Below, in pieces: positions 2,003 through 55,895 of a stretch of 64,000 bases of DNA. Every line of letters begins with the position of its first letter. Within the stretch, counting starts at the first letter, position 1. The stretch covers positions 62,001 through 126,000 of IMG/VR virus record IMGVR_UViG_3300023083_000001, one strand, 5' to 3'. The notes beneath the pieces are model-generated. The model was given only the letters and a program-made list of their open reading frames with translations. It was not told the DNA's origin and made no database searches. The position numbers and the translations under genes were made by a program.

Positions 2003-2018
2003 GTCATACATTGTAGAT
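2003..2018 (+). promoter_or_regulatory. putative early (virion RNAP) promoter motif
   Basis: GTCATACATTGTAGAT, identical to 11085-11100; resembles the phiKZ early motif TATATTAC (inference). Confidence 0.5.
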
Positions 2019-3072: not shown

Positions 3073-3384
3073 ATGGTCCCAAAGTCGTGCTTAGATTTAC
3101 TGTGTAACCAGATCCAGGAATACAACGCCCTGGCGCTTGAGAAGATCAAGCGCCTGCATTATGCAGGATTCACAGACCTTGAGTTAGTCGAAGGTCTGAT
3201 GGGGTTCTACGACCTGGCTGCACCAAAGATGTATTCTACATTGAACCTGATGAGTGAGGCGCAGAAGATTCGGCATTTACATGTTGTACTTAATTCCGCT
3301 TATCTGCAAACATTCGTCTCAGTTGAAGACGTGGGTGAGGTTGTTCCATGGAGGGTCAAAGCTTATGTCGATAAACATCTCTAA
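3073..3384 (+). CDS. hypothetical protein
   Basis: AAGGAG SD; followed by a terminator. Confidence 0.75.
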   Translation: MVPKSCLDLLCNQIQEYNALALEKIKRLHYAGFTDLELVEGLMGFYDLAAPKMYSTLNLMSEAQKIRHLHVVLNSAYLQTFVSVEDVGEVVPWRVKAYVDKHL

Positions 3385-3426
3385 CATGCAGCACCCTCAG
3401 GGGTGCTGTGTTCTCTTCTTTTTTTT
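3383..3426 (+). terminator. intrinsic terminator
   Basis: CAGCACCC-tcag-GGGTGCTG followed by a T-run. Confidence 0.7.
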
Positions 3427-3479
3427 GTTTACGTATAGAGAATAAGGTATAGAGATTAATAGATGGCAGCGATTAGCAC

Positions 3480-3770
3480 ATGAAACGAATCCACTTAAAA
3501 CCAGAATTCGCTACGAAGGGTTTCTATTACCTGGACCATCAGCCCACCGGCAAAGTTTACACCGGTGTATCTGACAACATGCAGCAAGAGATCCTGGACA
3601 TCCAGTACCAGTTACAACAAGGGACGTGTAAATGCAAACGTCTGGTCAGACTGCATATCGCAGAGTCCAGCTTTGTCGCTAAATGCTTTCCTGTTAAAGG
3701 TGTACGTGAAGCCAAGAAACTGGAAAAGGAATTCCGTCAGGACAAGCCTACGTTTCTCCTGATTAACTGA
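3480..3770 (+). CDS. small GIY-YIG-like nuclease domain protein
   Basis: KGFYYLDHQPTGKVYTGVS fits the GIY...YIG two-strand motif; catalytic-domain size only. Confidence 0.55.
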   Translation: MKRIHLKPEFATKGFYYLDHQPTGKVYTGVSDNMQQEILDIQYQLQQGTCKCKRLVRLHIAESSFVAKCFPVKGVREAKKLEKEFRQDKPTFLLIN

Positions 3771-3775
3771 AACGA

Positions 3776-3809
3776 CATACAGCCCCACCCTTGCGGGTGG
3801 GGCTGTATG
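3776..3809. terminator. bidirectional palindromic terminator
   Basis: 15-bp perfect stem CATACAGCCCCACCC/GGGTGGGGCTGTATG between convergent genes. Confidence 0.7.
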
Positions 3810-3827
3810 CTCTTTCTTTTTTTTGTA

Positions 3828-5063
3828 TCAGACCAAACTACCGCGAAGACCCAAGCAACGGTTGATCTCTACGAGAGCAGGTTTGATCAACCTGTCGGTA
3901 GGTGTGTGGATCGATCCACCCAAGAACCCCAACATGGCTTCTTCCACACGCATGACTGCATCAGCCTCACGATACGCGGTGAACTGCGGCTCAGCCCAGG
4001 TTTTGGGATCGCCCTGTTCATCGCTGACCTTTTGTCGTTTAGCAAGCTCGATCTCAAACTGACGTCTCACGCCGTCGATGATGGTTTTGAACTTCGAGAG
4101 TTTGTTTGCGTCGTAACCAAGTACCTCAATCAACTCTCGCCGAGCAGCCAGCAGTTTGTCAAGGGGAACTTGTTGCAGATTACGCACCTCGTAATCTTTA
4201 GGCTTACCGTTAATGATCTCAACCTTCGGTCCACCGGGGTAGAAAGCTGCGTACAGGTTAGTACCCGTACTGAACTTAATCTCCGCTGAGTAATTAGTCA
4301 CCATGTTCTGAAGCTGGCTGTGTTTACCGGTGACTGATTGTCGGTCCAACGTCACGCACTTCTGACAAGCCTTTTCGATCTCGTCGATAAACTTCTTGGA
4401 GAAGTCAGCAACCTTCCCGGCGTTAGTGACCACCTCATCAAACGTGTGACCCAGGAAGCCGATACTCACACTGTGACCTTCAGCGTAACCCAACCGCAGA
4501 CTGGTCGACGTCTGAGGACGTGGAGGCTTTGGCGCTGCTGCGGTAGTGGCCGGTTCTTTCTCAGCAAAGTGGCTGAAATCGTTTTTAGCTTCACGCGCTT
4601 GACTTTCAGCAGCTTCCTGTTGTTTCATCAAGACCGATACCGTCATGGTCTTTCTGGTGAACAGACTTTTGATCTTCTCGATCAGTGCAGCAATCAACCG
4701 TTTGATCGTGTCGGCGATGTTACCGAGCAAACCACGTTTCTTCGCTTCAGCTTCGGCAGAATATTCCTCAGCAGAAACACTCTCCATGGAAGGCAATGCG
4801 ATTGCTGCGTATTCTTCAACGCCGAAACATTCGAACGCCAGCCGGATTTTACCGTGGTAGCTTTCGACCGAGATCCCTTCTGGACTGATGTCCGTCAGAA
4901 CGTTGCGCATACGCATGGCGATGTGCAGGTCGTTGAGATCTTTCTCGATGGACGATTCAAGACTCATCGTTTCGAGCAGATCGGATTCCAGGCTGATACT
5001 TTCCAGTACGGGTAATGCCGATGGGGTGTTTCTCGCACTGAGTGATTTCAAGAGGCTAGACAT
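3828..5063 (-). CDS. phiKZ-like internal head protein (gp93/gp162-type paralog)
   Basis: Acidic N-terminal propeptide with several S-X-E motifs (ISLES, MSLES, ISVES, SMES), then a KKRG..IK.LI..LIEKIK helix. Confidence 0.7.
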   Translation of the reverse strand: MSSLLKSLSARNTPSALPVLESISLESDLLETMSLESSIEKDLNDLHIAMRMRNVLTDISPEGISVESYHGKIRLAFECFGVEEYAAIALPSMESVSAEEYSAEAEAKKRGLLGNIADTIKRLIAALIEKIKSLFTRKTMTVSVLMKQQEAAESQAREAKNDFSHFAEKEPATTAAAPKPPRPQTSTSLRLGYAEGHSVSIGFLGHTFDEVVTNAGKVADFSKKFIDEIEKACQKCVTLDRQSVTGKHSQLQNMVTNYSAEIKFSTGTNLYAAFYPGGPKVEIINGKPKDYEVRNLQQVPLDKLLAARRELIEVLGYDANKLSKFKTIIDGVRRQFEIELAKRQKVSDEQGDPKTWAEPQFTAYREADAVMRVEEAMLGFLGGSIHTPTDRLIKPALVEINRCLGLRGSLV

Positions 5064-5082
5064 GGACCGCGTTCCTTTCTAT

Positions 5083-6261
5083 TTACTGGACCGAGGTCTT
5101 CGCCATGTTAGCGAGTGCGCTCAGCTGATTGGACAACGTAACTACAGCCGTGTAGAGGTTGTTCTGGAAGCTTTGACCTTCTCGCGCTACGGCAAGCAGC
5201 TTGCCGAGGAACTTACGGTCCTTGGCGATCTCGGCAGGGTCAGCATCCACCTTAGCTTTGAGTTCCCGTTCAGCCTTCTCCAGCTTACCCAAAGCTTCCT
5301 GTCCATGTTGCGCCATCTTGAACAAGAATTCAGCGTCTTGCCTCACCAGGTCCAGCAGTGAGTTCAATTCATCCAGGACCACACCGCCTTCAACCACTGC
5401 CGCTGTGCCGATCGGTTTCATGTAGTCGTCGAAGATGCTGCGCCAGGCGACGGTGAAAGTTTCGACATCGGTCTCGCTCTCAGCACCTTCATTGATGGCT
5501 TTTTGTGCGAGGGCTCTGTAATCCAACCCTTGGATATCCACCAGGAACTTGCGGATCTTGTTGGTGTTCAGTTTACCCGAAGTCAACAAATGGGCTGGAG
5601 TAGTCGGACGTGGCTTGGCACCGTCCTTAACCGTGTCGCGTTCAATCACACCTTCTTTAGGAGGCGTCACTTTTTCAGGAGTAGTCGAGGCTGCTGGTTC
5701 GGCTGCTTTGGCAGGTGCAGCTTTAGGCTTAGCCGGTACAGCGGTGTAACCCAAGGCTTTGACTTCCTTGACGGTTTCTTTGGCAGCGTCTACTTTCTTC
5801 TTGATCGCTTCCGTCTTGACGCCGGCATTGTCTTTGCTGCGAGTCAGCCAGGCCTTGAGCTTGACGATCATTTCACGGATCCACTTGAGGACCGCAGCGA
5901 CCACATCCTTAGCCTTCTGACCAAAGCTCTTCTTGTCAGCTTCAGCCGCTTCCAGAGAAACGGTGAACGCTGCCACTGGCGCTTTAACACCCGTGCTGCT
6001 CATCAGGACGCCAACAGCGAAATGGTAGTCAGCAACCGATTCGGTAGACAACTCCACATTGCTGTAACGTTCAGTGATCGCTTCGAATGAATCACAGAAA
6101 GCCAATGCGCGAGTTACTTCGCCAAAACGGGCTTCAGTCGCATATTGGAAATCTTCATCCGACATGACCAGCGCCGAAGTGTCAACCGAGTCACTGGTTT
6201 CAGGGAGTTGAACTTCACCGCTTTCAATAGCGAGATCCATCAGCAGGTTCTTCAGGTCCAT
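5083..6261 (-). CDS. phiKZ-like internal head protein (paralog)
   Basis: LAIES, LSTES and VSLEA motifs, the same post-propeptide helix, and an Ala/Lys/Pro linker. Confidence 0.7.
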   Translation of the reverse strand: MDLKNLLMDLAIESGEVQLPETSDSVDTSALVMSDEDFQYATEARFGEVTRALAFCDSFEAITERYSNVELSTESVADYHFAVGVLMSSTGVKAPVAAFTVSLEAAEADKKSFGQKAKDVVAAVLKWIREMIVKLKAWLTRSKDNAGVKTEAIKKKVDAAKETVKEVKALGYTAVPAKPKAAPAKAAEPAASTTPEKVTPPKEGVIERDTVKDGAKPRPTTPAHLLTSGKLNTNKIRKFLVDIQGLDYRALAQKAINEGAESETDVETFTVAWRSIFDDYMKPIGTAAVVEGGVVLDELNSLLDLVRQDAEFLFKMAQHGQEALGKLEKAERELKAKVDADPAEIAKDRKFLGKLLAVAREGQSFQNNLYTAVVTLSNQLSALANMAKTSVQ

Positions 6262-6318: not shown

Positions 6319-9192
6319 TCAATGATTACTTCTAGCTCGGGTGAGATTCTTGCGGATGTCTATCAGGTCATCTCTGAATTGACGGATGGCCGCTTGATCA
6401 TCTTTGAATGTTTCGCTGGCGAGATAGTCAGTACCGCAGACCGTGTCATAGATACGTTCGTTCTGGGTTGCAAAATACGTCTCGCGAGTTGTAGTCTTGT
6501 AAAGGTCGTTAAGTTGTTCGATCAACGGCTTCATCAACACTGGTTTATCTTCAGCCAACACACGCAAGCGTGTAGAATGACAACCCAAGCGGATCAGTTC
6601 TTTATCCAACGTGGATGACTCGGTAGAGACTTCATTACGGACAATCTTGATCGTAGTGTTACGCAAGATCTGGTGGATATCCACGTGCTCCACTTTGACC
6701 AGGTTCTGATCGACATGACGTTGGGTCTTGTACTCACCGTTCATGTTGTTCTGCTTGTTCCAGTTCGGCATCCATCCATCATCGTTGTCCGCTTTGATCG
6801 TGTAGATCCAAACGGTCAAGTCCAGGATGTCTTTCTTACTGAAGTCAGGATCAGAGATTTCGATGGTCAGGGTTTTACGCTTCTCATCGTAGCTGTAACG
6901 ATCCAGGAGGAATTTCTTCTCAATAGCTGAGGAAATGCCCAACATGATCGCTTCCGTCTTGTCATCAGCCGTATAGAGCCACGTGTTGTCTTCAGTCCCA
7001 TCCCACTGGACCAACTCACCACTGCGCTCAAAGCCAGGCATCAGCTCGTTCTGTTTATAAGCAGAACCGTGGTAGAGGTAAGGCGGCAGTGCGTAGGTGG
7101 TGTTACCCTCCAGATCCTCCTTGATGGATTCCTGCTCGTACTGACCAATGAAGTCGCGGCGCACCAATCCGTTAGTTTCCAGACTGATCTCGTTCATGAC
7201 CAGATCGAGGATCTCGTTATCGCGACCGTGTGATTCCAGAGCCAGTGTGTCAGTGTCCACGTTGGTGATACCAAGGATACTGGCAACGCTTTCCTGAGAC
7301 CATTGCAAGATGTCGTTACTACGAGTGGAGATGTTAGGCTCATCACTGGTGTCGAGCAGCATGTCCCAGACAAACACTGGACCGTCTTGACCCAGACGCG
7401 CTGCCCGTGCAATTGTCTGCACACGGATCGCATCACGGAACGGTTGGTTGATCAGGATCATGTCACTGGCGGGTGTCAACGGTACCGCTGTCGACAGAGA
7501 CTGGAAAGTCGCCGCTAACGGATTGACATCAGGATCAACGTAGAACGATTTAACGATACTGGACAAGTCCTTGTTCGTTGCGCCGTAAACGCGAGCGGTG
7601 TTGTAACCTTCCTTCTCGATGATGTCAGCGGTACGTTCCAACACCTCCACAAACGAGGTGAAGATCAGCATCTTCTTGCGAGCACCGTCGATGTACTTGA
7701 CGAAGTCGATATGCTCAACCATCTCCAAGTGACACTTACTGCGCATGCCGCCAACAATGGTTCCGAGCGCCTCACCCATGATCTTGAGCTTGACGTACTT
7801 GACCACCGACCTTGCGCCTTTGAAATCGTTCTTCAAAGGGTTGGTCAATGTTGGCAAGATGGTCTTCAGCTCGTACGTATTGCAGAGCTGCGCCTCAGCT
7901 TTCATAAGCTTTGGATCATACCCGGAAGATATAGTTCTAAAAGCAGATCGGTAATTACCGTAAGCACGACGATCAGCGTCAGTACGCAAAGTTCTTTCGA
8001 AGACACTGAGACCTTCCTGATATTTGTCATCGAAGTACTTCTTGTTCTTCGTGTAGTACAGCACGCGTTCAGCAATAAAGTCTCTCATTACTTCGCCAAT
8101 CGCCTGGAGCGTGTACTTCTTGGCGTTAGGCATTTGTACTTTGACAACTTCAGCGGTCACCACGGTGTCGACCACATCCTGTTTAGGCACGTGGAACTTC
8201 AAGTGCCCGATGCGGTGACGCAAAATGTCGTTAGCACGACGTGCATCTTTACCGTAGATCTTACGGAAGCGTTCTTCACACTCATCGTCAAAATCAGGGA
8301 CGGCGCATTTAAGGAAAGGAACGCACTCGATCCCCAATGCCAGGATCGGTGTACCCGATGCCCAGAGGTTGTAGCCGATGTCCTTAATGCTGCACAGCTC
8401 GACAAACATCTGCGTACGGTCTGCCGCCAGACGGTTGAAGTTGTGAGACTCGTCCAACACGATAAACGTGTCTTTGTTCTTGAACTCACGAGGATTGGCT
8501 TTTACAAACGCCAGGATCTTCTCGAGAGATTCGTAGTGGCAGATGTAGTAATGATGGTTGGTCGTTGGAGCCGTCCCATCGGTACTCATCCAGTACGTTT
8601 TCTTTTGCAGCATGATGTTAGCGATTGTATCTTCCCAGACGCGTTCAATAGCGTTCTTAGGCGTAACGATAATCACATGCTTAGCGTGCAAGCACTCACC
8701 GAGTACCAGGTCTGCCACGGTCTTACCAGAGCCTGCACCGGCATCCAGCATGTAGCCACGCAGGTTATACGCAGGCAGCATCTTACCGTAGAGTCGTACG
8801 AACTCTTTCTGGAACGGCTTGAGGGGGAAGGGCACCAGTTTATCAACCACTGACAAATCGGTGATGGATTCCACATCGCGATCGATCTGACCCAACCAGG
8901 TCTTCGTCAGCAGTGCATCGATGATCTTAGCCAGTACACGTTTAGGTGTACGGGATTGACGATCCTTGTAGATCGTTTCGCAGATATAAAGGAAGTCCAA
9001 ACCGAAGAAGTGTTTCATCTTCAGTTCACTGGCACGTACCGTGCTGAACATGTATTTGGAGATGGTGTTGTTACCCCAGATCCGATACATGTCTTTGAAC
9101 AACGCAAACGTACTGATCCCTTCCACCACAATGTGCTTGGGCGTGACTTCAACGTCCACGATTCCCAAACGATACTTTAGACCTGATAACAT
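6319..9192 (-). CDS. SNF2-like SF2 helicase with C-terminal extra domains
   Basis: Walker A DAGAGSGKT, DESH box, motif III SGTP, motif VI QTIARAARLG; about 300 aa of extension after LALES. Confidence 0.85.
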   Translation of the reverse strand: MLSGLKYRLGIVDVEVTPKHIVVEGISTFALFKDMYRIWGNNTISKYMFSTVRASELKMKHFFGLDFLYICETIYKDRQSRTPKRVLAKIIDALLTKTWLGQIDRDVESITDLSVVDKLVPFPLKPFQKEFVRLYGKMLPAYNLRGYMLDAGAGSGKTVADLVLGECLHAKHVIIVTPKNAIERVWEDTIANIMLQKKTYWMSTDGTAPTTNHHYYICHYESLEKILAFVKANPREFKNKDTFIVLDESHNFNRLAADRTQMFVELCSIKDIGYNLWASGTPILALGIECVPFLKCAVPDFDDECEERFRKIYGKDARRANDILRHRIGHLKFHVPKQDVVDTVVTAEVVKVQMPNAKKYTLQAIGEVMRDFIAERVLYYTKNKKYFDDKYQEGLSVFERTLRTDADRRAYGNYRSAFRTISSGYDPKLMKAEAQLCNTYELKTILPTLTNPLKNDFKGARSVVKYVKLKIMGEALGTIVGGMRSKCHLEMVEHIDFVKYIDGARKKMLIFTSFVEVLERTADIIEKEGYNTARVYGATNKDLSSIVKSFYVDPDVNPLAATFQSLSTAVPLTPASDMILINQPFRDAIRVQTIARAARLGQDGPVFVWDMLLDTSDEPNISTRSNDILQWSQESVASILGITNVDTDTLALESHGRDNEILDLVMNEISLETNGLVRRDFIGQYEQESIKEDLEGNTTYALPPYLYHGSAYKQNELMPGFERSGELVQWDGTEDNTWLYTADDKTEAIMLGISSAIEKKFLLDRYSYDEKRKTLTIEISDPDFSKKDILDLTVWIYTIKADNDDGWMPNWNKQNNMNGEYKTQRHVDQNLVKVEHVDIHQILRNTTIKIVRNEVSTESSTLDKELIRLGCHSTRLRVLAEDKPVLMKPLIEQLNDLYKTTTRETYFATQNERIYDTVCGTDYLASETFKDDQAAIRQFRDDLIDIRKNLTRARSNH

Positions 9193-9252: not shown

Positions 9253-9564
9253 TCACAGCCAATCTTCGGGGATATCGGGCAGATCTACAATCTGTCCTTT
9301 CAGGTCATGACTGCAATCATCCAGGAAGTTAATCTTGCCCGCTTGTACGAAGGCATGGCACACCCGACGTGGATTATTCCCCAGGACCACCAGGACGCTA
9401 GGAGACAGAGTGGGGGTGAGTACATCCCCATCCCACTGCCAAATAGCGCCGACGCTGTTGCGTTTGAGGATGGTCACTGGATGCAACATCATACAACCTG
9501 GACAAAAATATTCGAGGACGTTGTCATCGCAGAGGATCAGTTTAGGAGACAGGTACTTATCCAT
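9253..9564 (-). CDS. DUF6527-like Zn-binding protein
   Basis: FCPGC..H, W.WDG...PTLSPS, CH.F...G.I.FL.DC.H. Confidence 0.65.
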   Translation of the reverse strand: MDKYLSPKLILCDDNVLEYFCPGCMMLHPVTILKRNSVGAIWQWDGDVLTPTLSPSVLVVLGNNPRRVCHAFVQAGKINFLDDCSHDLKGQIVDLPDIPEDWL

Positions 9565-9899
9565 TAGACTACCTCGTTCCCGTTCGCTGGAAAGTCAGGC
9601 AGATCCACGGTTTGGTTTGCCAGTGGGTGCCAGCAGTCTGACAAGAACTGCAACTTACCATCCGTCAGAAAGAGATGGCAGATCTTGCTAGTACCGTCCT
9701 CTACAGTAGGTGGTAGTGTGGTCTTGATGCTAGGTGTGAAGGTAGGCTTGTCGTAGTCCTTATTAAAGCCCCACGCACACTGTGAGGGGTTATCGGGATG
9801 TTCTACTGTGACGCTGTGTTTGACTTCACAACCTGGACACCAGAACTGAATGATGTACCCGTGGAAGCTCTGCAACTTGGGAGACAGTGTAGCGTACAT
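9564..9899 (-). CDS. DUF6527-like Zn-binding protein (tandem paralog)
   Basis: WCPGC..H, PTFTPS, CH.FLTDG.LQFLSDCWH; 1-bp overlap with its paralog. Confidence 0.65.
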   Translation of the reverse strand: MYATLSPKLQSFHGYIIQFWCPGCEVKHSVTVEHPDNPSQCAWGFNKDYDKPTFTPSIKTTLPPTVEDGTSKICHLFLTDGKLQFLSDCWHPLANQTVDLPDFPANGNEVV

Positions 9900-9929
9900 G
9901 TCTGATATGTCCTTAAAGAGAGGTGTGTG

Positions 9930-10757
9930 ATGTTAGCTGTTCTAATCAAAGGTAATCCTAAATTCATAAACACCGATCAAGCTCGTAATTATTATCAGGA
10001 GATTATCAACTTCCTCCAAAACTTAGGTTTTAAAGTTGAAGTGAACGCTGGCTCTGATTACACACGCCCACGTCAAGATGCTGCTCTTTACATTGGCCAC
10101 TCTCGAGGCGCTGGCCGATATGAGTTCATGGACGAAAAGAACCAGCTTAAGTTTTTGAGGTTCGGTGATCCTGACGGAATTATCGATCCGGTTGATCGTA
10201 AGTGGCAAGCCGAGAATCCACCACCTACTAATCAACACCCACCTAAGGAACACTTCATCTTCTCGAAACAACAACAAGACGCAATATTGGATAAGGTTCG
10301 TCAGCTTGGATTGGATGTCTCCACTGAATCTGTTCTACCTAATCTAAAGGAGGATGCTGATCGCTTGGTCGCACTGGCGATGAAGGATGAGTTCCTGGGA
10401 CCCAAAGCATTGGAACGCCACATGGATAATCTTACCATGATCCAATTCAAGGGTAAGAACGTGGGGTTCATGGTGCCGTTCAAAGAAGCCGATGGACGTT
10501 ACCGGGCAGGTAGCATCTACATCGAACCTGAGTACCGTAATAAAGGTTTGGCGACTACCCACATCAGCGAATGGTTTCGCAACCGTCGGGGTCGTGCGTG
10601 GATCGAACCCAAGAATGCTGCGAGTCAGAAGATCTTCAAACAGGCAGGTTTCTACAAGACTGGGCGAACGCAAAAGGGTAAGTCTGGCCGCACTTTTGAT
10701 GAGTGGGTAAACAATGGAATGCCCGCGACTAACGGCGCTGCGGTGTGGGGTTGGTAA
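9930..10757 (+). CDS. alpha/beta-hydrolase-like domain fused to GNAT acetyltransferase
   Basis: GHSRG nucleophile-elbow motif in the N-half; GNAT motifs IYIEPEYRNKGLA and N.ASQKIFKQAGF in the C-half; ATG at 9930 follows GAGAGG. Confidence 0.7.
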   Translation: MLAVLIKGNPKFINTDQARNYYQEIINFLQNLGFKVEVNAGSDYTRPRQDAALYIGHSRGAGRYEFMDEKNQLKFLRFGDPDGIIDPVDRKWQAENPPPTNQHPPKEHFIFSKQQQDAILDKVRQLGLDVSTESVLPNLKEDADRLVALAMKDEFLGPKALERHMDNLTMIQFKGKNVGFMVPFKEADGRYRAGSIYIEPEYRNKGLATTHISEWFRNRRGRAWIEPKNAASQKIFKQAGFYKTGRTQKGKSGRTFDEWVNNGMPATNGAAVWGW

Positions 10758-10770
10758 TTGTACTGTATTA

Positions 10771-11056
10771 TATGAGAAAAGTGCGATTTGGGCGAATTGT
10801 CTCTTGACTCACATCTGACAGTTGCTGGCCTCCTGGCTGTCAGGTAACCGAAGACCGAGATATCCTCCTTGGTCTTGACACAGGTGTTTACGGGTTCACC
10901 TGTGTCTTGCGCGGGCTATGAGTGCTCAGCCGTGAGAGCGTTGTTTTGCGAGGATACGCAGCGCTCTCACGGAAGACTCCTCCTTCCCCTAGTGTGGCTC
11001 TTCATCTGGCACCAAGTAAAGCACCGGTCGGGTAACTGGCCGGTGCTTTATGCCGC
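10771..11056 (+). ncRNA. candidate structured small RNA with three anti-SD motifs
   Basis: No credible ORF; four stems (10815-10843, 10851-10876, 10877-10906, 10930-10972) plus a terminal hairpin 11017-11050; G-U pairs favour the + strand; TATG at 10771. Confidence 0.5.
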
Positions 11057-11080: not shown

Positions 11081-11100
11081 TACAGTCATACATTGTAGAT
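11081..11100 (+). promoter_or_regulatory. putative early promoter motif
   Basis: TACAGTCATACATTGTAGAT. Confidence 0.5.
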
Positions 11101-11136
11101 GGGAATAGGTACAACTAACGACCGAGGAGGTCTGTA

Positions 11137-11457
11137 ATGATGTCGAGAGGAGGATCTCGTAGGCGAAGCTCTTTCGATGACCCTAACGAGGAGATTGAAT
11201 TTGAAACAGACTTCAATCCAGAAGAGTTCATCAACTGGCTGGAAACTGTAATCGACAACATCGTCTCTGAACTGACAAGACTACAACGTCAGAACAATGA
11301 TGACATCGTCGATGGAAGAAGTCCAAGGTTACGCGACGCGGATGAAATTACGATCCAGTTGTGCGACCTGTGTAAACTCAAACATGACGTAAAGGCCTAC
11401 ACTGCCAAGTCAGGTCTGCGTCAAGCAAGCAACTATCTTAACCGTAAACTAGGTTAA
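11137..11457 (+). CDS. hypothetical early protein
   Basis: Strong SD; 106 aa with basic N-terminus and acidic middle. Confidence 0.75.
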   Translation: MMSRGGSRRRSSFDDPNEEIEFETDFNPEEFINWLETVIDNIVSELTRLQRQNNDDIVDGRSPRLRDADEITIQLCDLCKLKHDVKAYTAKSGLRQASNYLNRKLG

Positions 11458-12250: not shown

Positions 12251-12538
12251 TTTACGGATGTATCTATATACTATGTAACGACAGTTGCCCTCGACTCAAC
12301 TACCGTTAGCTCTTTCACAATTTGCGTCTCCCTGATACTGGCTTTTGGCCTTCCTTCATAGACAACCCGCACCGCTGGTATCCAGCCCAGCATCTTAATA
12401 AGTACCCTACTGAAGGTTCGGTACGTCGTGTACGTCGTTTGTACACACAACAAGAATAACTGCCAGCCTTCGGGCTGGCTTTTATGCTGCATGTATTAGA
12501 TGTACCTCACACAGACCATTGCAGTATGGAGATTCACT

Positions 12539-33142: not shown

Positions 33143-33294
33143 ACGGTGGTAAGTTGGGTGATGCGGTGGATGCCAGCATCAGGCGCAGGTTACAGCAGAT
33201 GCGGATGCGAAGAACCATTCGCATTTGTAAGCTGGTTGTGATCGGTATGGCTATTTATTTAGTCATTCATCTGGTACACGCTCATGGAGCGTGA
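33139..33294 (+). CDS. small membrane protein (not in ORF track)
   Basis: ATGA overlap with the upstream stop; 51 aa MNGGKLG...IRICKLVVIGMAIYLVIHLVHAHGA with one TM helix. Confidence 0.55.
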   Translation: MNGGKLGDAVDASIRRRLQQMRMRRTIRICKLVVIGMAIYLVIHLVHAHGA

Positions 33295-33490
33295 CTTGAC
33301 GTGGGAAGATGTGACGCTGTGGGTGTTGGCAGCTTTAGTCATGACAGCAATGGCTGTGACGATTACAGTGGCTGATCGTAAAGGTCAACTGGAGGAGATC
33401 TGCGGCAATAACAAAGAACGAGCTGAAGCCGGAATCCTGGTGGATACTTCCAATAAACTGTTTGCTATTAAGTGTCACGATACCTACTGA
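33284..33490 (+). CDS. small membrane protein
   Basis: TM helix VTLWVLAALVMTAMAVTITV; periplasmic-type Cys pair. Confidence 0.65.
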   Translation: MERDLTWEDVTLWVLAALVMTAMAVTITVADRKGQLEEICGNNKERAEAGILVDTSNKLFAIKCHDTY

Positions 33491-33505
33491 CCGAGGAGGT
33501 CATAA

Positions 33506-33625
33506 ATGAGTAATACCGTCATGTTGTTTGTCGGCATTGGTATTGGCATGTACATCATGAGCCAGAAGCATAAAACTGCCGAAGCTCTGAAGGCCATGCA
33601 AGCCGCTGCTGGCGTCACTGTGTAA
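33506..33625 (+). CDS. small membrane peptide (not in ORF track)
   Basis: GAGGAGG SD; 39 aa MSNTVMLFVGIGIGMYIMSQKHKTAEALKAMQAAAGVTV; followed by a terminator. Confidence 0.65.
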   Translation: MSNTVMLFVGIGIGMYIMSQKHKTAEALKAMQAAAGVTV

Positions 33626-33636
33626 TTACGCGATCA

Positions 33637-33686
33637 GCATAGACCGGGTGGATCTCCACCCGGCTTTATGTTCTTTATTTTTTATT
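33637..33686 (+). terminator. terminator
   Basis: CCGGGTGGA-tc-TCCACCCGG, then TTTATG and a T-run. Confidence 0.6.
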
Positions 33687-33703
33687 GACTGAGGAAGTCC
33701 TGC

Positions 33704-37623: not shown

Positions 37624-37816
37624 TCCATGCTATGGAAAACGCCGTATTTAATACGGTAATATGTAGAGTGCGTGTTAATTCACGTACTTAAAGATTTCTT
37701 TACGCCCTGCGGGACGTAGGATCGCTTTGGTTGGTGCACTAATCAGAGGCGGGCGTCGATCCTAAACACAAAGCTTTGATCACTTAAAGATACCAAATGG
37801 CTATTTGGAGCTGTAC

Positions 37817-55587: not shown

Positions 55588-55595
55588 TAGAAATA

Positions 55596-55632
55596 GGTTG
55601 GGTAGACCTTCGGGTCTGCCTGACTTTATTTT
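55596..55632 (+). terminator. intrinsic terminator
   Basis: GGTAGACC-ttcg-GGTCTGCC, then TTTATTTT. Confidence 0.65.
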
Positions 55633-55685
55633 GTTAACGTATCGTGTAATCTTTTGTAGAAGCTTTCTTCCTTATTCGGAGGAGA

Positions 55686-55737
55686 CGTAGCAAAGCGAAG
55701 GCGACGATACACAACTGAGCGAGCGTAGCAAAGCGAA
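55686..55737. repeat. 14-bp direct repeat CGTAGCAAAGCGAA (x2)
   Basis: Copies at 55686-55699 and 55724-55737. Confidence 0.8.
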
Positions 55738-55790
55738 CATCTCTAGTGCTTTTAGGGGGAGAGGGTTTTTATGCTGCATATTGAAAATTA

Positions 55791-55808
55791 TTACAACCCT
55801 ACATTACA
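55791..55808 (+). promoter_or_regulatory. putative early promoter motif (variant)
   Basis: TTACAACCCTACATTACA. Confidence 0.35.
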
Positions 55809-55895
55809 AAAGTGACTGTACGTACTGGTCTCTACGGACCAGTACTAATAAACATAGCTAGCTGTAAAACCTACCTATAAAGGAAATGATCAGCC

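What the first reader, a model, noticed from the sequence alone, without database searches (positions are those of the whole stretch)
10771..11056. Candidate phage sRNA with three anti-Shine-Dalgarno motifs, one complementary to the early-gene RBS hairpin
Seen: a ~285-nt ORF-less region starts at a TATG (the phiKZ late-promoter tetranucleotide) and ends in a long terminal hairpin (11017-11050). It holds four clean stems: 10815-10843, 10851-10876, 10877-10906 (10 bp perfect) and 10930-10972 (11 bp perfect). The G-U pairs only work on the + strand. CCTCCT occurs three times (10829-34, 10864-69, 10979-84), two of them in or at loops; about 0.07 copies are expected in 280 nt at uniform composition (post hoc estimate). 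Segment 10864-10874 (CCUCCUUGGUC) pairs 11/11, with one G-U, to GACCGAGGAGG, the RBS element at 2034, 2323, 11120, 11851, 33489 and 34980. Its loop exposes UCCUC, the exact complement of the GAGGA target loop, and its own 5' arm (GACCGAG) mimics the target. Inference: loop-loop kissing followed by strand exchange could let a late RNA shut off, or remodel, translation of many early mRNAs at once, analogous to C-rich-loop sRNAs such as staphylococcal RsaE. I know of no such system described in jumbo phages.
Basis: partly seen in the sequence, partly recalled or inferred. Interest (0 to 1): 0.85.

Follow-up and report, generated by a model that had tools for sequence, protein, structure and literature searches.

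The report
New structured RNA in jumbo phages
The flagged stretch is a real, conserved, heavily folded non-coding RNA gene of an uncultivated group of phiKZ-like giant phages, but its "anti-ribosome-binding-site" loop pairs with another loop of the same RNA family-wide, so it is not a conserved free antisense seed.

Summary

I found 13 distinct homologues. All lie just downstream of a hydrolase-GNAT gene in uncultivated phiKZ-like (chimallivirus-like) contigs. None is in Rfam 15, and blastn found none in cultured phages.

Five helices are strongly supported: 95% of cells are paired and 41 of 47 pairs show compensatory changes. The RNA strand is + (65 G.U pairs against 5 A.C).

The key new result concerns the C-rich loop of stem 2, the proposed anti-SD seed. 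It is complementary to the purine-rich apical loop of stem 4 in every homologue, and the two covary (UAUCCUC:GAGGAUA, CGCUCUC:GAGAGCG, CAUUCCC:GGGAAUG, CCCC:GGGG). That is a kissing loop.

- CCUCCU is not conserved.
- A subclade without RBS hairpins in the loci sampled keeps the RNA.
- Complementarity to the RBS hairpin is only marginally above shuffles, and only in two lineages.

Verdict: a new family of shape-dependent phage ncRNA. The sRNA call is supported; the anti-SD mechanism is not supported as the family's function. Function is still unknown. A second conserved ncRNA lies at about 12262-12490.

The parts
10766..10774 (+). Promoter-like box TATTATATG ending in TATG; the G at 10774 is the inferred transcription start
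   Evidence: The box is conserved at the 5' edge of the 12 full-length homologues aligned and of L074. The same TATTATAT box lies upstream of the GNAT gene in L008/L069 and upstream of a second non-coding unit in L003/L006. phiKZ late promoters are TATG with the G as +1 (PMC4666361). The start site here is inferred, not measured.
10784..10799 (+). H0: small 5' hairpin CGAUUU-GGGC-GAAUUG with a G-rich loop
   Evidence: Read from the sequence and from the per-sequence folds of the homologues. A hairpin with a GGGC/GGGU loop recurs in most homologues. Covariation was not tested formally.
10813..10845 (+). H1: 10-11 bp stem; the apical region carries CCUCCU (10829-10834)
   Evidence: All 10 modelled pairs show compensatory changes and 96.9% of cells are paired. 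CUCC occurs in the H1 apical region of 11 of the 12 distinct homologues examined.
10846..10850 (+). H1/H2 linker (UAACC G) with a nearly invariant ACC
   Evidence: Alignments A9 and A13. Its partner is unknown; ACC:GGU pairing with the H3 loop is possible but unproven.
10851..10876 (+). H2: 9-bp stem with loop AUAUCCUC.
   Evidence: All 7 modelled pairs are compensatory and 100% of cells are paired. Loop nucleotides 10861-10867 (UAUCCUC) form the 5' half of the kissing interaction.
10877..10906 (+). H3: 10-bp perfect stem; the loop UUUACGGGUU holds a near-invariant GGG
   Evidence: 8 of 10 pairs are compensatory. GGG is present in 11 of 13 loops. It could pair with CUC/UCC of the H1 loop (32 of 33 cells), but that gives no informative covariation.
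10913..10927 (+). H3b: short helix GGGC/GCUC. Its 3' strand is part of the conserved block GCUCAGCC.
   Evidence: 5 modelled pairs, 3 with compensatory change, 91% of cells paired. In subclade B an extension of H4 competes for the same nucleotides.
10930..10972 (+). H4: long stem whose apical loop holds GAGGAUA (10950-10956)
   Evidence: 13 of 15 pairs are compensatory and 96.9% of cells are paired. The apical purine-rich loop is the 3' half of the kissing interaction.
10973..11016 (+). Variable tail containing the third CCTCCT (10979-10984)
   Evidence: Neither sequence nor length is conserved among homologues.
11017..11055 (+). Intrinsic-type terminator hairpin (15 bp) followed by UUUAUGCCG
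   Evidence: A GC-rich hairpin followed by TTTATGC(C/T)G recurs at many gene ends in the window and in all related loci. It is present at the 3' end of the 12 full-length homologues aligned.
11085..11132 (+). Not part of the RNA: downstream promoter-like box GTCATACATTGTAGAT and the RBS hairpin GACCGAGGAGGTC of the next gene
   Evidence: The same box and hairpin arrangement occurs at 2005-2046, and a similar box at 2700. The ATACATTGTA box also follows the RNA in subclade B.

Best explanation
Window 10766-11055 (+) encodes a roughly 280-nt non-coding RNA. It belongs to a previously undescribed family found in a clade of uncultivated phiKZ-like jumbo phages, always immediately after a hydrolase-GNAT family gene.

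**Transcription (inferred).** It runs from its own TATG-type box (by analogy, a start for the phage's non-virion RNA polymerase). It may also arise by read-through from the GNAT gene. It stops at the clade's standard terminator.

**Fold (shown).** The RNA forms H0, H1, H2, H3, H3b and H4. The C-rich loop of H2 pairs over 6-8 nt with the purine-rich apical loop of H4, which is a kissing loop. The CUCC of the H1 loop may likewise meet the GGG of the H3 loop.

**Mechanism (inferred).** The C-rich 'anti-SD' motifs are therefore mainly building blocks of a tertiary fold, not free antisense seeds. My commitment is that the RNA works through its folded shape, as a ligand, scaffold or decoy for a protein or ribonucleoprotein partner of phage or host. 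I do not think it works by pairing with ribosome-binding sites. The existence, strand, helices and loop-loop pairing are shown by comparative analysis. The transcription boundaries, the timing and the shape-dependent partner binding are inferred. The confidence given covers the whole statement, mode of action included. For the structural part alone (a conserved + strand RNA with an H2:H4 loop pairing) I would put it near 0.9.
For: **Family.** 13 distinct homologues were found by nhmmer and covariance models, all next to GNAT homologues of 49-60% amino-acid identity.

**Helices.** On 13 sequences, 95.0% of cells are paired and 41 of 47 pairs have compensatory changes. Slid controls give 31-44%, and 0 of 500 shuffles reach the score.

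**Kissing loop.**
- 89.7-91.8% of cells are paired against 44-64% when slid.
- 6 of 7 positions are compensatory, and 0 of 500 shuffles reach the score.
- These columns were not constrained by the model.
- Explicit pairs: UAUCCUC:GAGGAUA, AUGUCCUC:GGGGACAU, CGCUCUC:GAGAGCG, UGCUCUC:GAGAGCA, CAUUCCC:GGGAAUG, CCCC:GGGG.
- Mean duplex energy is -10.6 kcal/mol for cognate pairs and -7.6 for non-cognate pairs.

**Strand.** 65 G.U against 5 A.C. The + strand MFE is lower in all 12 homologues.

**Non-coding.** No conserved ORF.

**Own unit.** The box is conserved and is reused upstream of other units, and the terminator motif is clade-wide.

**Not a leader of one gene.** The gene immediately downstream differs between homologues. 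There is no covarying antiterminator: -12.6 cognate against -12.8 non-cognate.

**Not a known family.** No Rfam 15 hit for the window or for four homologues, even at E <= 10.
Against: - There are no expression data, because the phage is uncultivated. The start, the end and even the existence of the transcript are inferred.
- No partner protein is identified. Neighbouring genes give no functional clue.
- The alignments were fitted to the helices by a covariance model, which inflates paired percentages. The loop-loop columns were not fitted.
- The 13 sequences form only three or four lineages, so counted cells overstate the number of independent events.
- Whether the H2:H4 pairing is within one molecule or between molecules cannot be told from sequence.
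- In the window and in L014/L040, stem 2 has 10-11 nt of complementarity to an RBS-hairpin variant present in the same locus. A regulatory pairing role in those lineages is therefore not excluded.
Confidence: 0.55

Rival explanations
1. The RNA is a trans-acting antisense regulator: the H2 loop and its 3' arm (and perhaps the H1 loop) kiss the GAGGA loop of early-gene RBS hairpins and then invade them. The H4 loop would act as an internal competitor, a lock that masks the seed until a target is met.
For: - Window stem 2 pairs 11/11 with GACCGAGGAGG, at -22 to -25 kcal/mol against 6 sites.
- L040 stem 2 (GCUCUCCUCGG) pairs 11/11 with the GCCCGAGGAGGGC variant in its own locus; L014 pairs 10 nt.
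- The H4 loop resembles the SD half of the hairpin (GAGGAC in L008/L069/L009).
- RBS hairpins are real structured elements with a covarying stem position.
Against: - The seed is not conserved (CGCUCUC, CAUUCCC, CCCC). It tracks the H4 loop, not the near-constant SD.
- CCUCC is absent from most homologues.
- The subclade-B loci sampled lack RBS hairpins and have CCCC loops that cannot pair with AGGAG, yet they keep the RNA.
- Complementarity beats shuffles only at 2-3% in two lineages and not at all in nine others.
- In L008, L069 and L009 only a 6-nt match, or less, exists.
Confidence: 0.13
2. A cis-acting element: either a long structured leader or attenuator (riboswitch-like) that gates read-through of its terminator into the downstream gene cassette, or a 3'UTR that stabilises the GNAT mRNA.
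For: - The unit always ends in a terminator upstream of co-directional genes. It begins 2-10 nt after the stop codon of the GNAT-family gene, with no terminator between them.
- phiKZ and 201phi2-1 produce abundant short RNAs by conditional termination in 5'UTRs (PMC10914365, PMC11512511).
- Kissing loops are common in riboswitch aptamers (established knowledge).
Against: - The immediately downstream gene is not homologous across the family.
- A separate conserved promoter-like box lies between the terminator and the next gene.
- The spacer between H4 and the terminator varies in length and sequence.
- The terminator's 5' arm has no covarying upstream partner: -12.6 kcal/mol cognate against -12.8 non-cognate.
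- No enclosing P1 helix was found.
Confidence: 0.13
3. A self-assembling RNA. The H2 and H4 loops pair between molecules ('hand in hand', as in phi29 pRNA or the ROOL/GOLLD cages), giving dimers or rings that act as an architectural particle.
For: - Two mutually complementary, covarying loops in one RNA are exactly the pRNA signature (PMC4201828, abstract only).
- The H2 stem (7-9 bp) and the H4 stem (15-16 bp plus a large loop) differ in length. That does not obviously favour a side-by-side contact within one molecule (inference).
- RNA-only multimers held by kissing loops have been solved (bioRxiv 10.1101/2024.12.08.627333). That they are common in phages and prophages is from my own knowledge.
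Against: - Nothing distinguishes pairing between molecules from pairing within one molecule. Intramolecular kissing is the commoner case in natural RNAs.
- There is no similarity to pRNA, ROOL or GOLLD in Rfam searches.
- Chimalliviruses are not known to need a packaging RNA (own knowledge).
Confidence: 0.1
4. Not a functional RNA: a DNA-level element (an origin, or a binding-site array) or a chance cluster of hairpins.
For: Both strands fold better than their shuffles (z = -5.6 and -4.6), as any set of inverted repeats would.
Against: - Compensatory changes run through G.U intermediates that exist only on the + strand (65 against 5).
- 41 of 47 pairs are compensatory.
- Loop-loop covariation has no meaning in duplex DNA.
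- The element is conserved while the flanking protein is only 49-60% identical.
Confidence: 0.01

Closest known systems
RsaE/RoxS-type C-rich-loop sRNAs of Firmicutes (Rfam RF01820)
   Same: A small RNA with several hairpins and C-rich motifs in or next to loops that are complementary to Shine-Dalgarno sequences.
   Different: In RsaE the C-rich motifs are invariant, unpaired seeds (own knowledge). Here the H2 motif varies and covaries with an internal partner, and CCUCC is absent from most members. There is no Rfam match. The RNA is about 280 nt with six helices, much larger and more constrained than a typical seed-type sRNA.
phi29-family packaging RNA (pRNA, Rfam RF00044)
   Same: A phage-encoded structured RNA with two loops that are complementary to each other and covary across relatives.
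   Different: There is no sequence or structure match. The pRNA loop pairing is about 4 nt and intermolecular, and pRNA is part of the DNA-packaging motor. Here the pairing is 6-8 nt, its molecularity is unknown, and nothing links it to packaging.
Short non-coding transcripts of phiKZ and 201phi2-1 mapped by ONT-cappable-seq, Grad-seq and dRNA-seq
   Same: Jumbo-phage transcription units of under about 250-300 nt, bounded by a phage promoter and a conserved-motif terminator. They often sit just upstream of genes, and their function is unknown (PMC10914365, PMC11512511).
   Different: No homology was detected. blastn against 50,697 phage records found nothing. The covariance model found nothing within +/-4 kb of the related gene in the IMG/VR loci whose lengths match Psa21, 201phi2-1 and PhiPA3, nor in the FLC9 GNAT region. 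Those RNAs have expression evidence but little comparative structure evidence. This one has the reverse.
Riboswitch aptamers stabilised by loop-loop kissing (purine L2-L3, lysine L2-L3, cobalamin L5-L13)
   Same: A multi-helix RNA with a covarying kissing loop and conserved junction nucleotides, followed by an intrinsic terminator.
   Different: There is no closing P1 helix, no antiterminator coupled to the terminator, no conserved downstream gene and no Rfam hit.
Large ornate RNAs of phages and prophages (ROOL, GOLLD) and raiA
   Same: Phage-associated, intricately folded RNAs of unknown function whose loops mediate higher-order contacts (bioRxiv 10.1101/2024.12.08.627333).
   Different: Those RNAs are two to three times larger (own knowledge). 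There is no Rfam match, and multimerisation is untested here.

Membership tests
Seed-type anti-SD sRNA (RsaE-like) | C-rich seed motif invariant across homologues | tested here: not met
   H2 loop variants are UAUCCUC, GUCCUC, CGCUCUC, UGCUCUC, CAUUCCC and CCCC. CCUCC is absent from most homologues.
Seed-type anti-SD sRNA (RsaE-like) | Seed unpaired and accessible in the conserved structure | tested here: not met
   The H2 loop pairs with the H4 loop in about 90% of cells, with compensatory changes. The H1 CUCC straddles the loop/stem boundary.
Seed-type anti-SD sRNA (RsaE-like) | Complementarity to target RBSs conserved across the family and above chance | tested here: not met
   Above shuffles only in the window (3%) and L040 (2%); not significant in 9 others. 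RBS hairpins are absent from the subclade-B loci sampled.
Seed-type anti-SD sRNA (RsaE-like) | Match to the Rfam model | tested here: not met
   No hit at E <= 10.
phi29-type pRNA | Two mutually complementary, covarying loops | tested here: met
phi29-type pRNA | The loop pairing is intermolecular and builds a ring on the portal | not testable with these tools
   Needs native gels, SEC-MALS or cryo-EM.
phi29-type pRNA | Homology to the pRNA model (RF00044) | tested here: not met
   No Rfam hit.
Terminator-coupled riboswitch or attenuator | Alternative antiterminator pairing that covaries with the terminator | tested here: not met
   Duplex energies are -12.6 kcal/mol cognate against -12.8 non-cognate, and the best sites are at inconsistent positions.
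Terminator-coupled riboswitch or attenuator | Conserved regulated gene downstream | tested here: not met
   The first downstream ORF belongs to different or orphan families among homologues.
Independent phage ncRNA transcription unit (as mapped in phiKZ and 201phi2-1) | Own promoter motif and own terminator flanking a non-coding stretch | tested here: met
   The TATTATATG box and the hairpin-TTTATGCYG motif are both conserved and are reused elsewhere in these genomes. This rests on sequence motifs only.
Independent phage ncRNA transcription unit (as mapped in phiKZ and 201phi2-1) | Discrete transcript observed during infection | not testable with these tools
   The phage is uncultivated and no transcriptome is at hand.
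6S, tmRNA, tRNA-like, RNase P, SRP, Y RNA and other known RNAs | Match to the family covariance model or tRNA scan | tested here: not met
   Rfam 15 at gathering and at E <= 10. ARAGORN found no tRNA or tmRNA in the window.

The most novel reading that the evidence does not exclude
The RNA is a self-locking SD/anti-SD mimic. Its H4 loop imitates the phage's own RBS-hairpin loop and its H2 loop imitates the anti-SD. The two kiss either within one molecule (a lock opened by early mRNA leaders or by 30S subunits) or between molecules (a multimeric particle). In that way a phage RNA made from a late-type promoter would reprogramme translation of RBS-hairpin genes in nucleus-forming jumbo phages.
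Probability: 0.12. Interest if true: 0.85.

Novelty: new variant of a known kind. Interest (0 to 1): 0.62.

Why it matters
Nucleus-forming jumbo phages are a major model for phage cell biology, yet none of their non-coding RNAs has a known function or a validated structure.

This locus gives a family with unusually clear comparative support: five helices plus a covarying kissing loop, from only 13 sequences. It is absent from Rfam and sits in a fixed genomic position beside a second conserved ncRNA. That makes it a tractable entry point. The RNA is short enough to synthesise, probe, image and use as bait.

The case also warns against reading C-rich loops as anti-SD seeds without first checking for internal partners.

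Tried and rejected
- **Known RNA families:** Rfam on the region at E <= 10, on four homologous loci, and on the whole window at gathering threshold. Nothing credible was found. ARAGORN found no tRNA or tmRNA.
- **Cultured phages:** blastn of the window element and of the L014 element against 50,697 phage records found no homologue. tblastn of the GNAT protein found only partial domain matches in Pseudomonas chimalliviruses and FLC9. The FLC9 GNAT neighbourhood is densely coding with no gap, and the covariance model found nothing there.
- **Wider search with covariance models:** searches of 49 loci around distant homologues of the N-terminal domain found no further members. These included the IMG/VR contigs whose lengths match Psa21, 201phi2-1 and PhiPA3.
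- **Closing P1 helix between the 5' leader and the 3' tail:** RNAduplex gave inconsistent partners. Not adopted.
- **ACC-linker:H3-loop pseudoknot and H1-loop:H3-loop kissing:** both are compatible with the sequences, but GGG is nearly invariant, so there is no informative covariation. Left as possibilities.
- **Antiterminator search:** negative.
- **Small-protein reading:** the longest ORFs differ in strand and frame between homologues.
- **CsrA/RsmA sponge idea (GGA in loops):** rejected, because the L014/L040/L075 H4 loops (GAGAGC) lack GGA.
- **Promoter class from the literature:** supplementary promoter tables were not available. Only the TATG rule could be cited.
- my first kissing-loop count used columns off by one and was corrected.
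Full report
**1. What the window is**

The 64-kb window is part of IMG/VR contig IMGVR_UViG_3300023083_000001 (258 kb). Its SNF2/DEAD helicase is about 40% identical to those of phiKZ-like jumbo phages (FLC9, RTH11, LucasX, RP12, Noxifer and others). Related contigs carry PhiKZ_MCP and DUF7941 genes. It is an uncultivated chimallivirus-like phage of about 50% GC.

**2. The observation**

The finding lies in a 379-nt gap between a GNAT-fusion gene (9927-10757, +) and a 106-aa gene (11137-11457, +).

- The + strand folds at -124.7 kcal/mol (z = -5.6); the - strand gives -105.1.
- Three CCTCCT in 286 nt compares with about 0.06 expected from the window-wide rate.
- Stem 2 is predicted to pair with the GACC-type RBS hairpins at -22 to -25 kcal/mol. 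Shuffles of the RNA reach the observed best energy in 3% of trials.

The complementarity is only marginally beyond chance.

**3. Homologues**

blastn found nothing in 50,697 phage records. Rfam 15 and ARAGORN found nothing.

The upstream GNAT-fusion protein has relatives of 49-60% identity on metagenomic contigs of up to 243 kb. I fetched their contexts and scanned IMG/VR and JGI metagenomes with a GNAT alignment. Every contig with a full-length relative has a gap of about 350-375 nt right after the GNAT gene, or after a 168-aa GNAT-family gene that follows it. That gap aligns with the window's gap.

nhmmer and two covariance models recover 13 distinct sequences and nothing else:

| Locus | Coordinates |
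|---|---|
| window | 10766-11055 |
| L008 | 6800-7092 |
| L069 | 3800-4094 |
| L009 | 2138-2415 |
| L044 | 939-1216 |
| L014 | 4848-5129 |
| L040 | 4848-5129 |
| L075 | core 1304-1469 |
| L074 | core 3381-3538 |
| L003 | 7340-7617 |
| L067 | 4340-4620 |
| L006 | 6959-7226 |
| L007 | 7349-7615 |

Loci around more distant homologues gave no hit. These include the IMG/VR contigs whose lengths match Psa21, 201phi2-1 and PhiPA3, and the FLC9 GNAT region, which has no gap.

**4. Anatomy shared by all members**

- A box (C/T)ATTATATG ends in TATG.
- It is followed by a small hairpin H0, then H1, an ACC-containing linker, H2, H3, a short H3b whose 3' strand is the conserved GCUCAGC, and a long H4.
- A variable tail comes next.
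- A GC-rich terminator hairpin followed by (U)UUAUGC(C/U)G closes the unit.

On the 13-sequence model alignment, 95.0% of cells in 47 pairs are standard pairs and 41 pairs show changes on both sides. Slid controls give 31-44%, and no shuffle of 500 reaches any measure (11-sequence version). The alignment was fitted to these helices, which inflates the percentages, but the margin is very large.

The helices contain 65 G.U/U.G and 5 A.C/C.A pairs, and the + strand MFE is 12-30 kcal/mol lower in all twelve full-length sequences. The RNA is therefore the + strand. No ORF is conserved.

**5. The key result: a kissing loop**

Comparing loops by eye, the H2 loop is complementary to the H4 apical loop in each genome, and the two change together.

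| Homologue | H2 loop : H4 loop |
|---|---|
| window (10861-10867 with 10950-10956) | UAUCCUC:GAGGAUA |
| L008 | AUGUCCUC:GGGGACAU |
| L069, L009 | GUCCUC:GAGGAC |
| L014, L040 | CGCUCUC:GAGAGCG |
| L075 | UGCUCUC:GAGAGCA |
| L074 | CAUUCCC:GGGAAUG |
| L003 | UCCUCGA:UCGGGGA |
| L006, L067, L007 | CCCC:GGGG |

Cognate duplexes average -10.6 kcal/mol against -7.6 for non-cognate pairs. Counted as a pseudoknot on columns that the model treats as unpaired, 91.8% (11 sequences) and 89.7% (13 sequences) of cells pair. Slid controls give 44-64%. Six of seven positions have compensatory changes, and 0 of 500 shuffles reach the covariation score. My first attempt was one column out of register.

A scan of all unpaired columns found only one other recurrent candidate. 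CUC/UCC at the 3' side of the H1 loop could pair with the near-invariant GGG of the H3 loop (32 of 33 cells). Because GGG hardly varies, this is uninformative.

**6.

- Motif 2 (10864-10869) is half of the kissing loop.
- Motif 1 (10829-10834) overlaps the conserved CUCC of the H1 loop, whose likely partner is also internal.
- Motif 3 (10979-10984) lies in the non-conserved tail.
- CCUCCU is absent from 10 of the 11 other full-length homologues. It occurs once, in a terminator arm, in L067. CCUCC is absent from most members.
- The RBS hairpin GNCC-G(A/U)GGAGG-GNC is a real element. There are eleven copies in the window, and position 2 covaries with position 12 as A-U, U-A or C-G.
- It occurs only in loci of subclade A. 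The four subclade-B loci show none, yet they keep the RNA with CCCC/GGGG loops.
- Extended complementarity of stem 2 to an RBS variant exists in the window and in L014/L040 (10-11 nt). In L008, L069 and L009 only 6 nt or fewer match.
- Against shuffles, only the window (3%) and L040 (2%) stand out.

A seed that drifts with an internal partner, while the SD it is supposed to bind stays constant, is not what a conserved anti-SD regulator looks like. A lineage-specific secondary use cannot be excluded.

**7. Transcription unit**

The TATTATAT box is unique in the window. It recurs upstream of the GNAT gene in L008/L069 and upstream of a second non-coding gap in L003/L006. The hairpin-TTTATGCYG motif recurs at many gene ends in all these genomes. 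In phiKZ, late promoters of the non-virion RNA polymerase are TATG with the G as +1 (PMC4666361). By analogy the RNA would start at G10774. This is inference.

A separate conserved box (ATACATTGTA) and the RBS hairpin follow the terminator. The first downstream gene is not homologous across the family, whereas the upstream gene is always of the GNAT family. The terminator's 5' arm has no covarying upstream partner. I found no consistent closing helix. These points argue against a gene-specific leader or riboswitch.

**8. What it most likely is**

It is a shape-dependent non-coding RNA: a compact fold locked by at least one loop-loop interaction, presenting conserved unpaired nucleotides. The pattern is dense covariation in every helix, tertiary covariation and conserved junctions. 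That pattern is typical of RNAs that act through their three-dimensional form (protein or RNP ligands, scaffolds, decoys, ribozymes, aptamers). It is not typical of seed-type antisense RNAs.

I commit to partner binding in trans as the most likely mode, but no partner is identified, and the neighbouring genes give no clue. My confidence is high for 'conserved structured + strand RNA with an H2:H4 loop pairing'. It is modest for the mode of action.

**9. Comparison with known systems**

- **RsaE-type sRNAs:** they share C-rich loops but fail on seed invariance, accessibility and target conservation.
- **phi29 pRNA:** it shares the signature of two mutually complementary covarying loops (PMC4201828), but there is no homology, and molecularity is untested.
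- **phiKZ and 201phi2-1 short RNAs:** these are delimited by phage promoters and terminators and have unknown function (PMC10914365, PMC11512511, PMC8244752). The present RNA is of that general kind but not demonstrably homologous.
- **Literature:** searches for jumbo-phage structured RNAs or phage anti-SD sRNAs found nothing matching.

**10. Verdict**

The 'sRNA' call is supported. The anti-SD mechanism is not supported as the family's function. This is a new RNA family of a known general kind (phage-encoded structured ncRNA), with a well-supported kissing loop.

Noticed in passing
window 12262-12492 (+); L003 9046-9282, L006 8657-8895, L007 9560-9805, L067 6037-6290, L008 8925-9295, L009 3635-3995, L069 5580-5960: A second conserved non-coding unit ('RNA-2') lies about 1.2 kb downstream. 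It has a T-rich tract, a TATTATATG/TACTATG box, conserved blocks GCUCUUUYACAA, UCACAGUAAG and CAGCUCCCUGA, and a terminator of the same hairpin-UUUAUGCUG type. One helix shows compensatory changes (9 of 15 pairs). The window copy is the most divergent (fold z = -2.9). It has no Rfam match.
   Followed up: partly
window 2034, 2323, 2757, 11120, 11463, 11851, 31267, 31688, 32161, 33489, 34980 (+); also L008, L069, L009, L014, L040: There are eleven copies of a 13-nt ribosome-binding-site mini-hairpin, GNCC-G(A/T)GGAGG-NC, 4-8 nt before start codons. Stem positions 2 and 12 covary (A-U, U-A, C-G), so the SD is half-buried in a conserved 4-bp stem with a GAGGA/GUGGA loop. It is absent from the subclade-B loci sampled.
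   Followed up: partly
window 11047, 12202(-), 12481, 2659, 40145, 45882(-), 55768 and others; all related loci: The clade-wide terminator signature is a GC-rich hairpin followed by (C/T)TTTATGC(C/T)G. The invariant ATGC after a short T run contains a TATG. A terminator may therefore double as a restart site for the phage polymerase. This was not tested.
   Followed up: partly
window 2005-2016, 2700-2711, 11087-11098 (+); L003 7640, L006 7249 and 4000, L007 7638, L067 4642: A promoter-like box (G)T(C/A)ATACATTGTA(G/A) lies about 25-35 nt upstream of RBS-hairpin genes or of the gene after the RNA. It is probably a distinct promoter class of this clade.
   Followed up: no
window 9927-10757 (+): The gene always linked to the RNA is a fusion. 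An approximately 130-aa N-terminal domain (phrog_30942, with conserved KGNPKFI and Y(I/V)GHSRG motifs; GHSRG fits the GXSXG serine-hydrolase pattern) is joined to a C-terminal GNAT acetyltransferase. Cultured Pseudomonas chimalliviruses (Psa21, 201phi2-1, PhiPA3) carry only the N-terminal domain. In subclade B a separate 168-aa GNAT-family gene sits between it and the RNA.
   Followed up: partly
window 9253-9564 and 9564-9899 (-): Two tandem DUF6527 (Pfam PF20137, 'BubE') genes lie between the SNF2 helicase and the GNAT gene. A BubE gene is in the same place in L008, L074 and L075.
   Followed up: no
window 33143-33703, 55588-55895, 1946-2031, 37624-37804: There are other long intergenic gaps in the window. 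At least 1946-2031 repeats the terminator / TATGCC / ATACATTGTAG / RBS-hairpin arrangement. The others were not examined for further RNAs.
   Followed up: no
L003 7500-7570, L006 7120-7190, L067, L007 (subclade B): In subclade B the nucleotides of H3b (UGAGC/GCUCA) can alternatively pair with the tail just after H4. Examples are CGGGCG...CGUCCCG in L003 and UCGAGCGC...GUGACUCGA in L006. This extends H4 with apparent covariation, and could be either two mutually exclusive conformations or a different junction.
   Followed up: no
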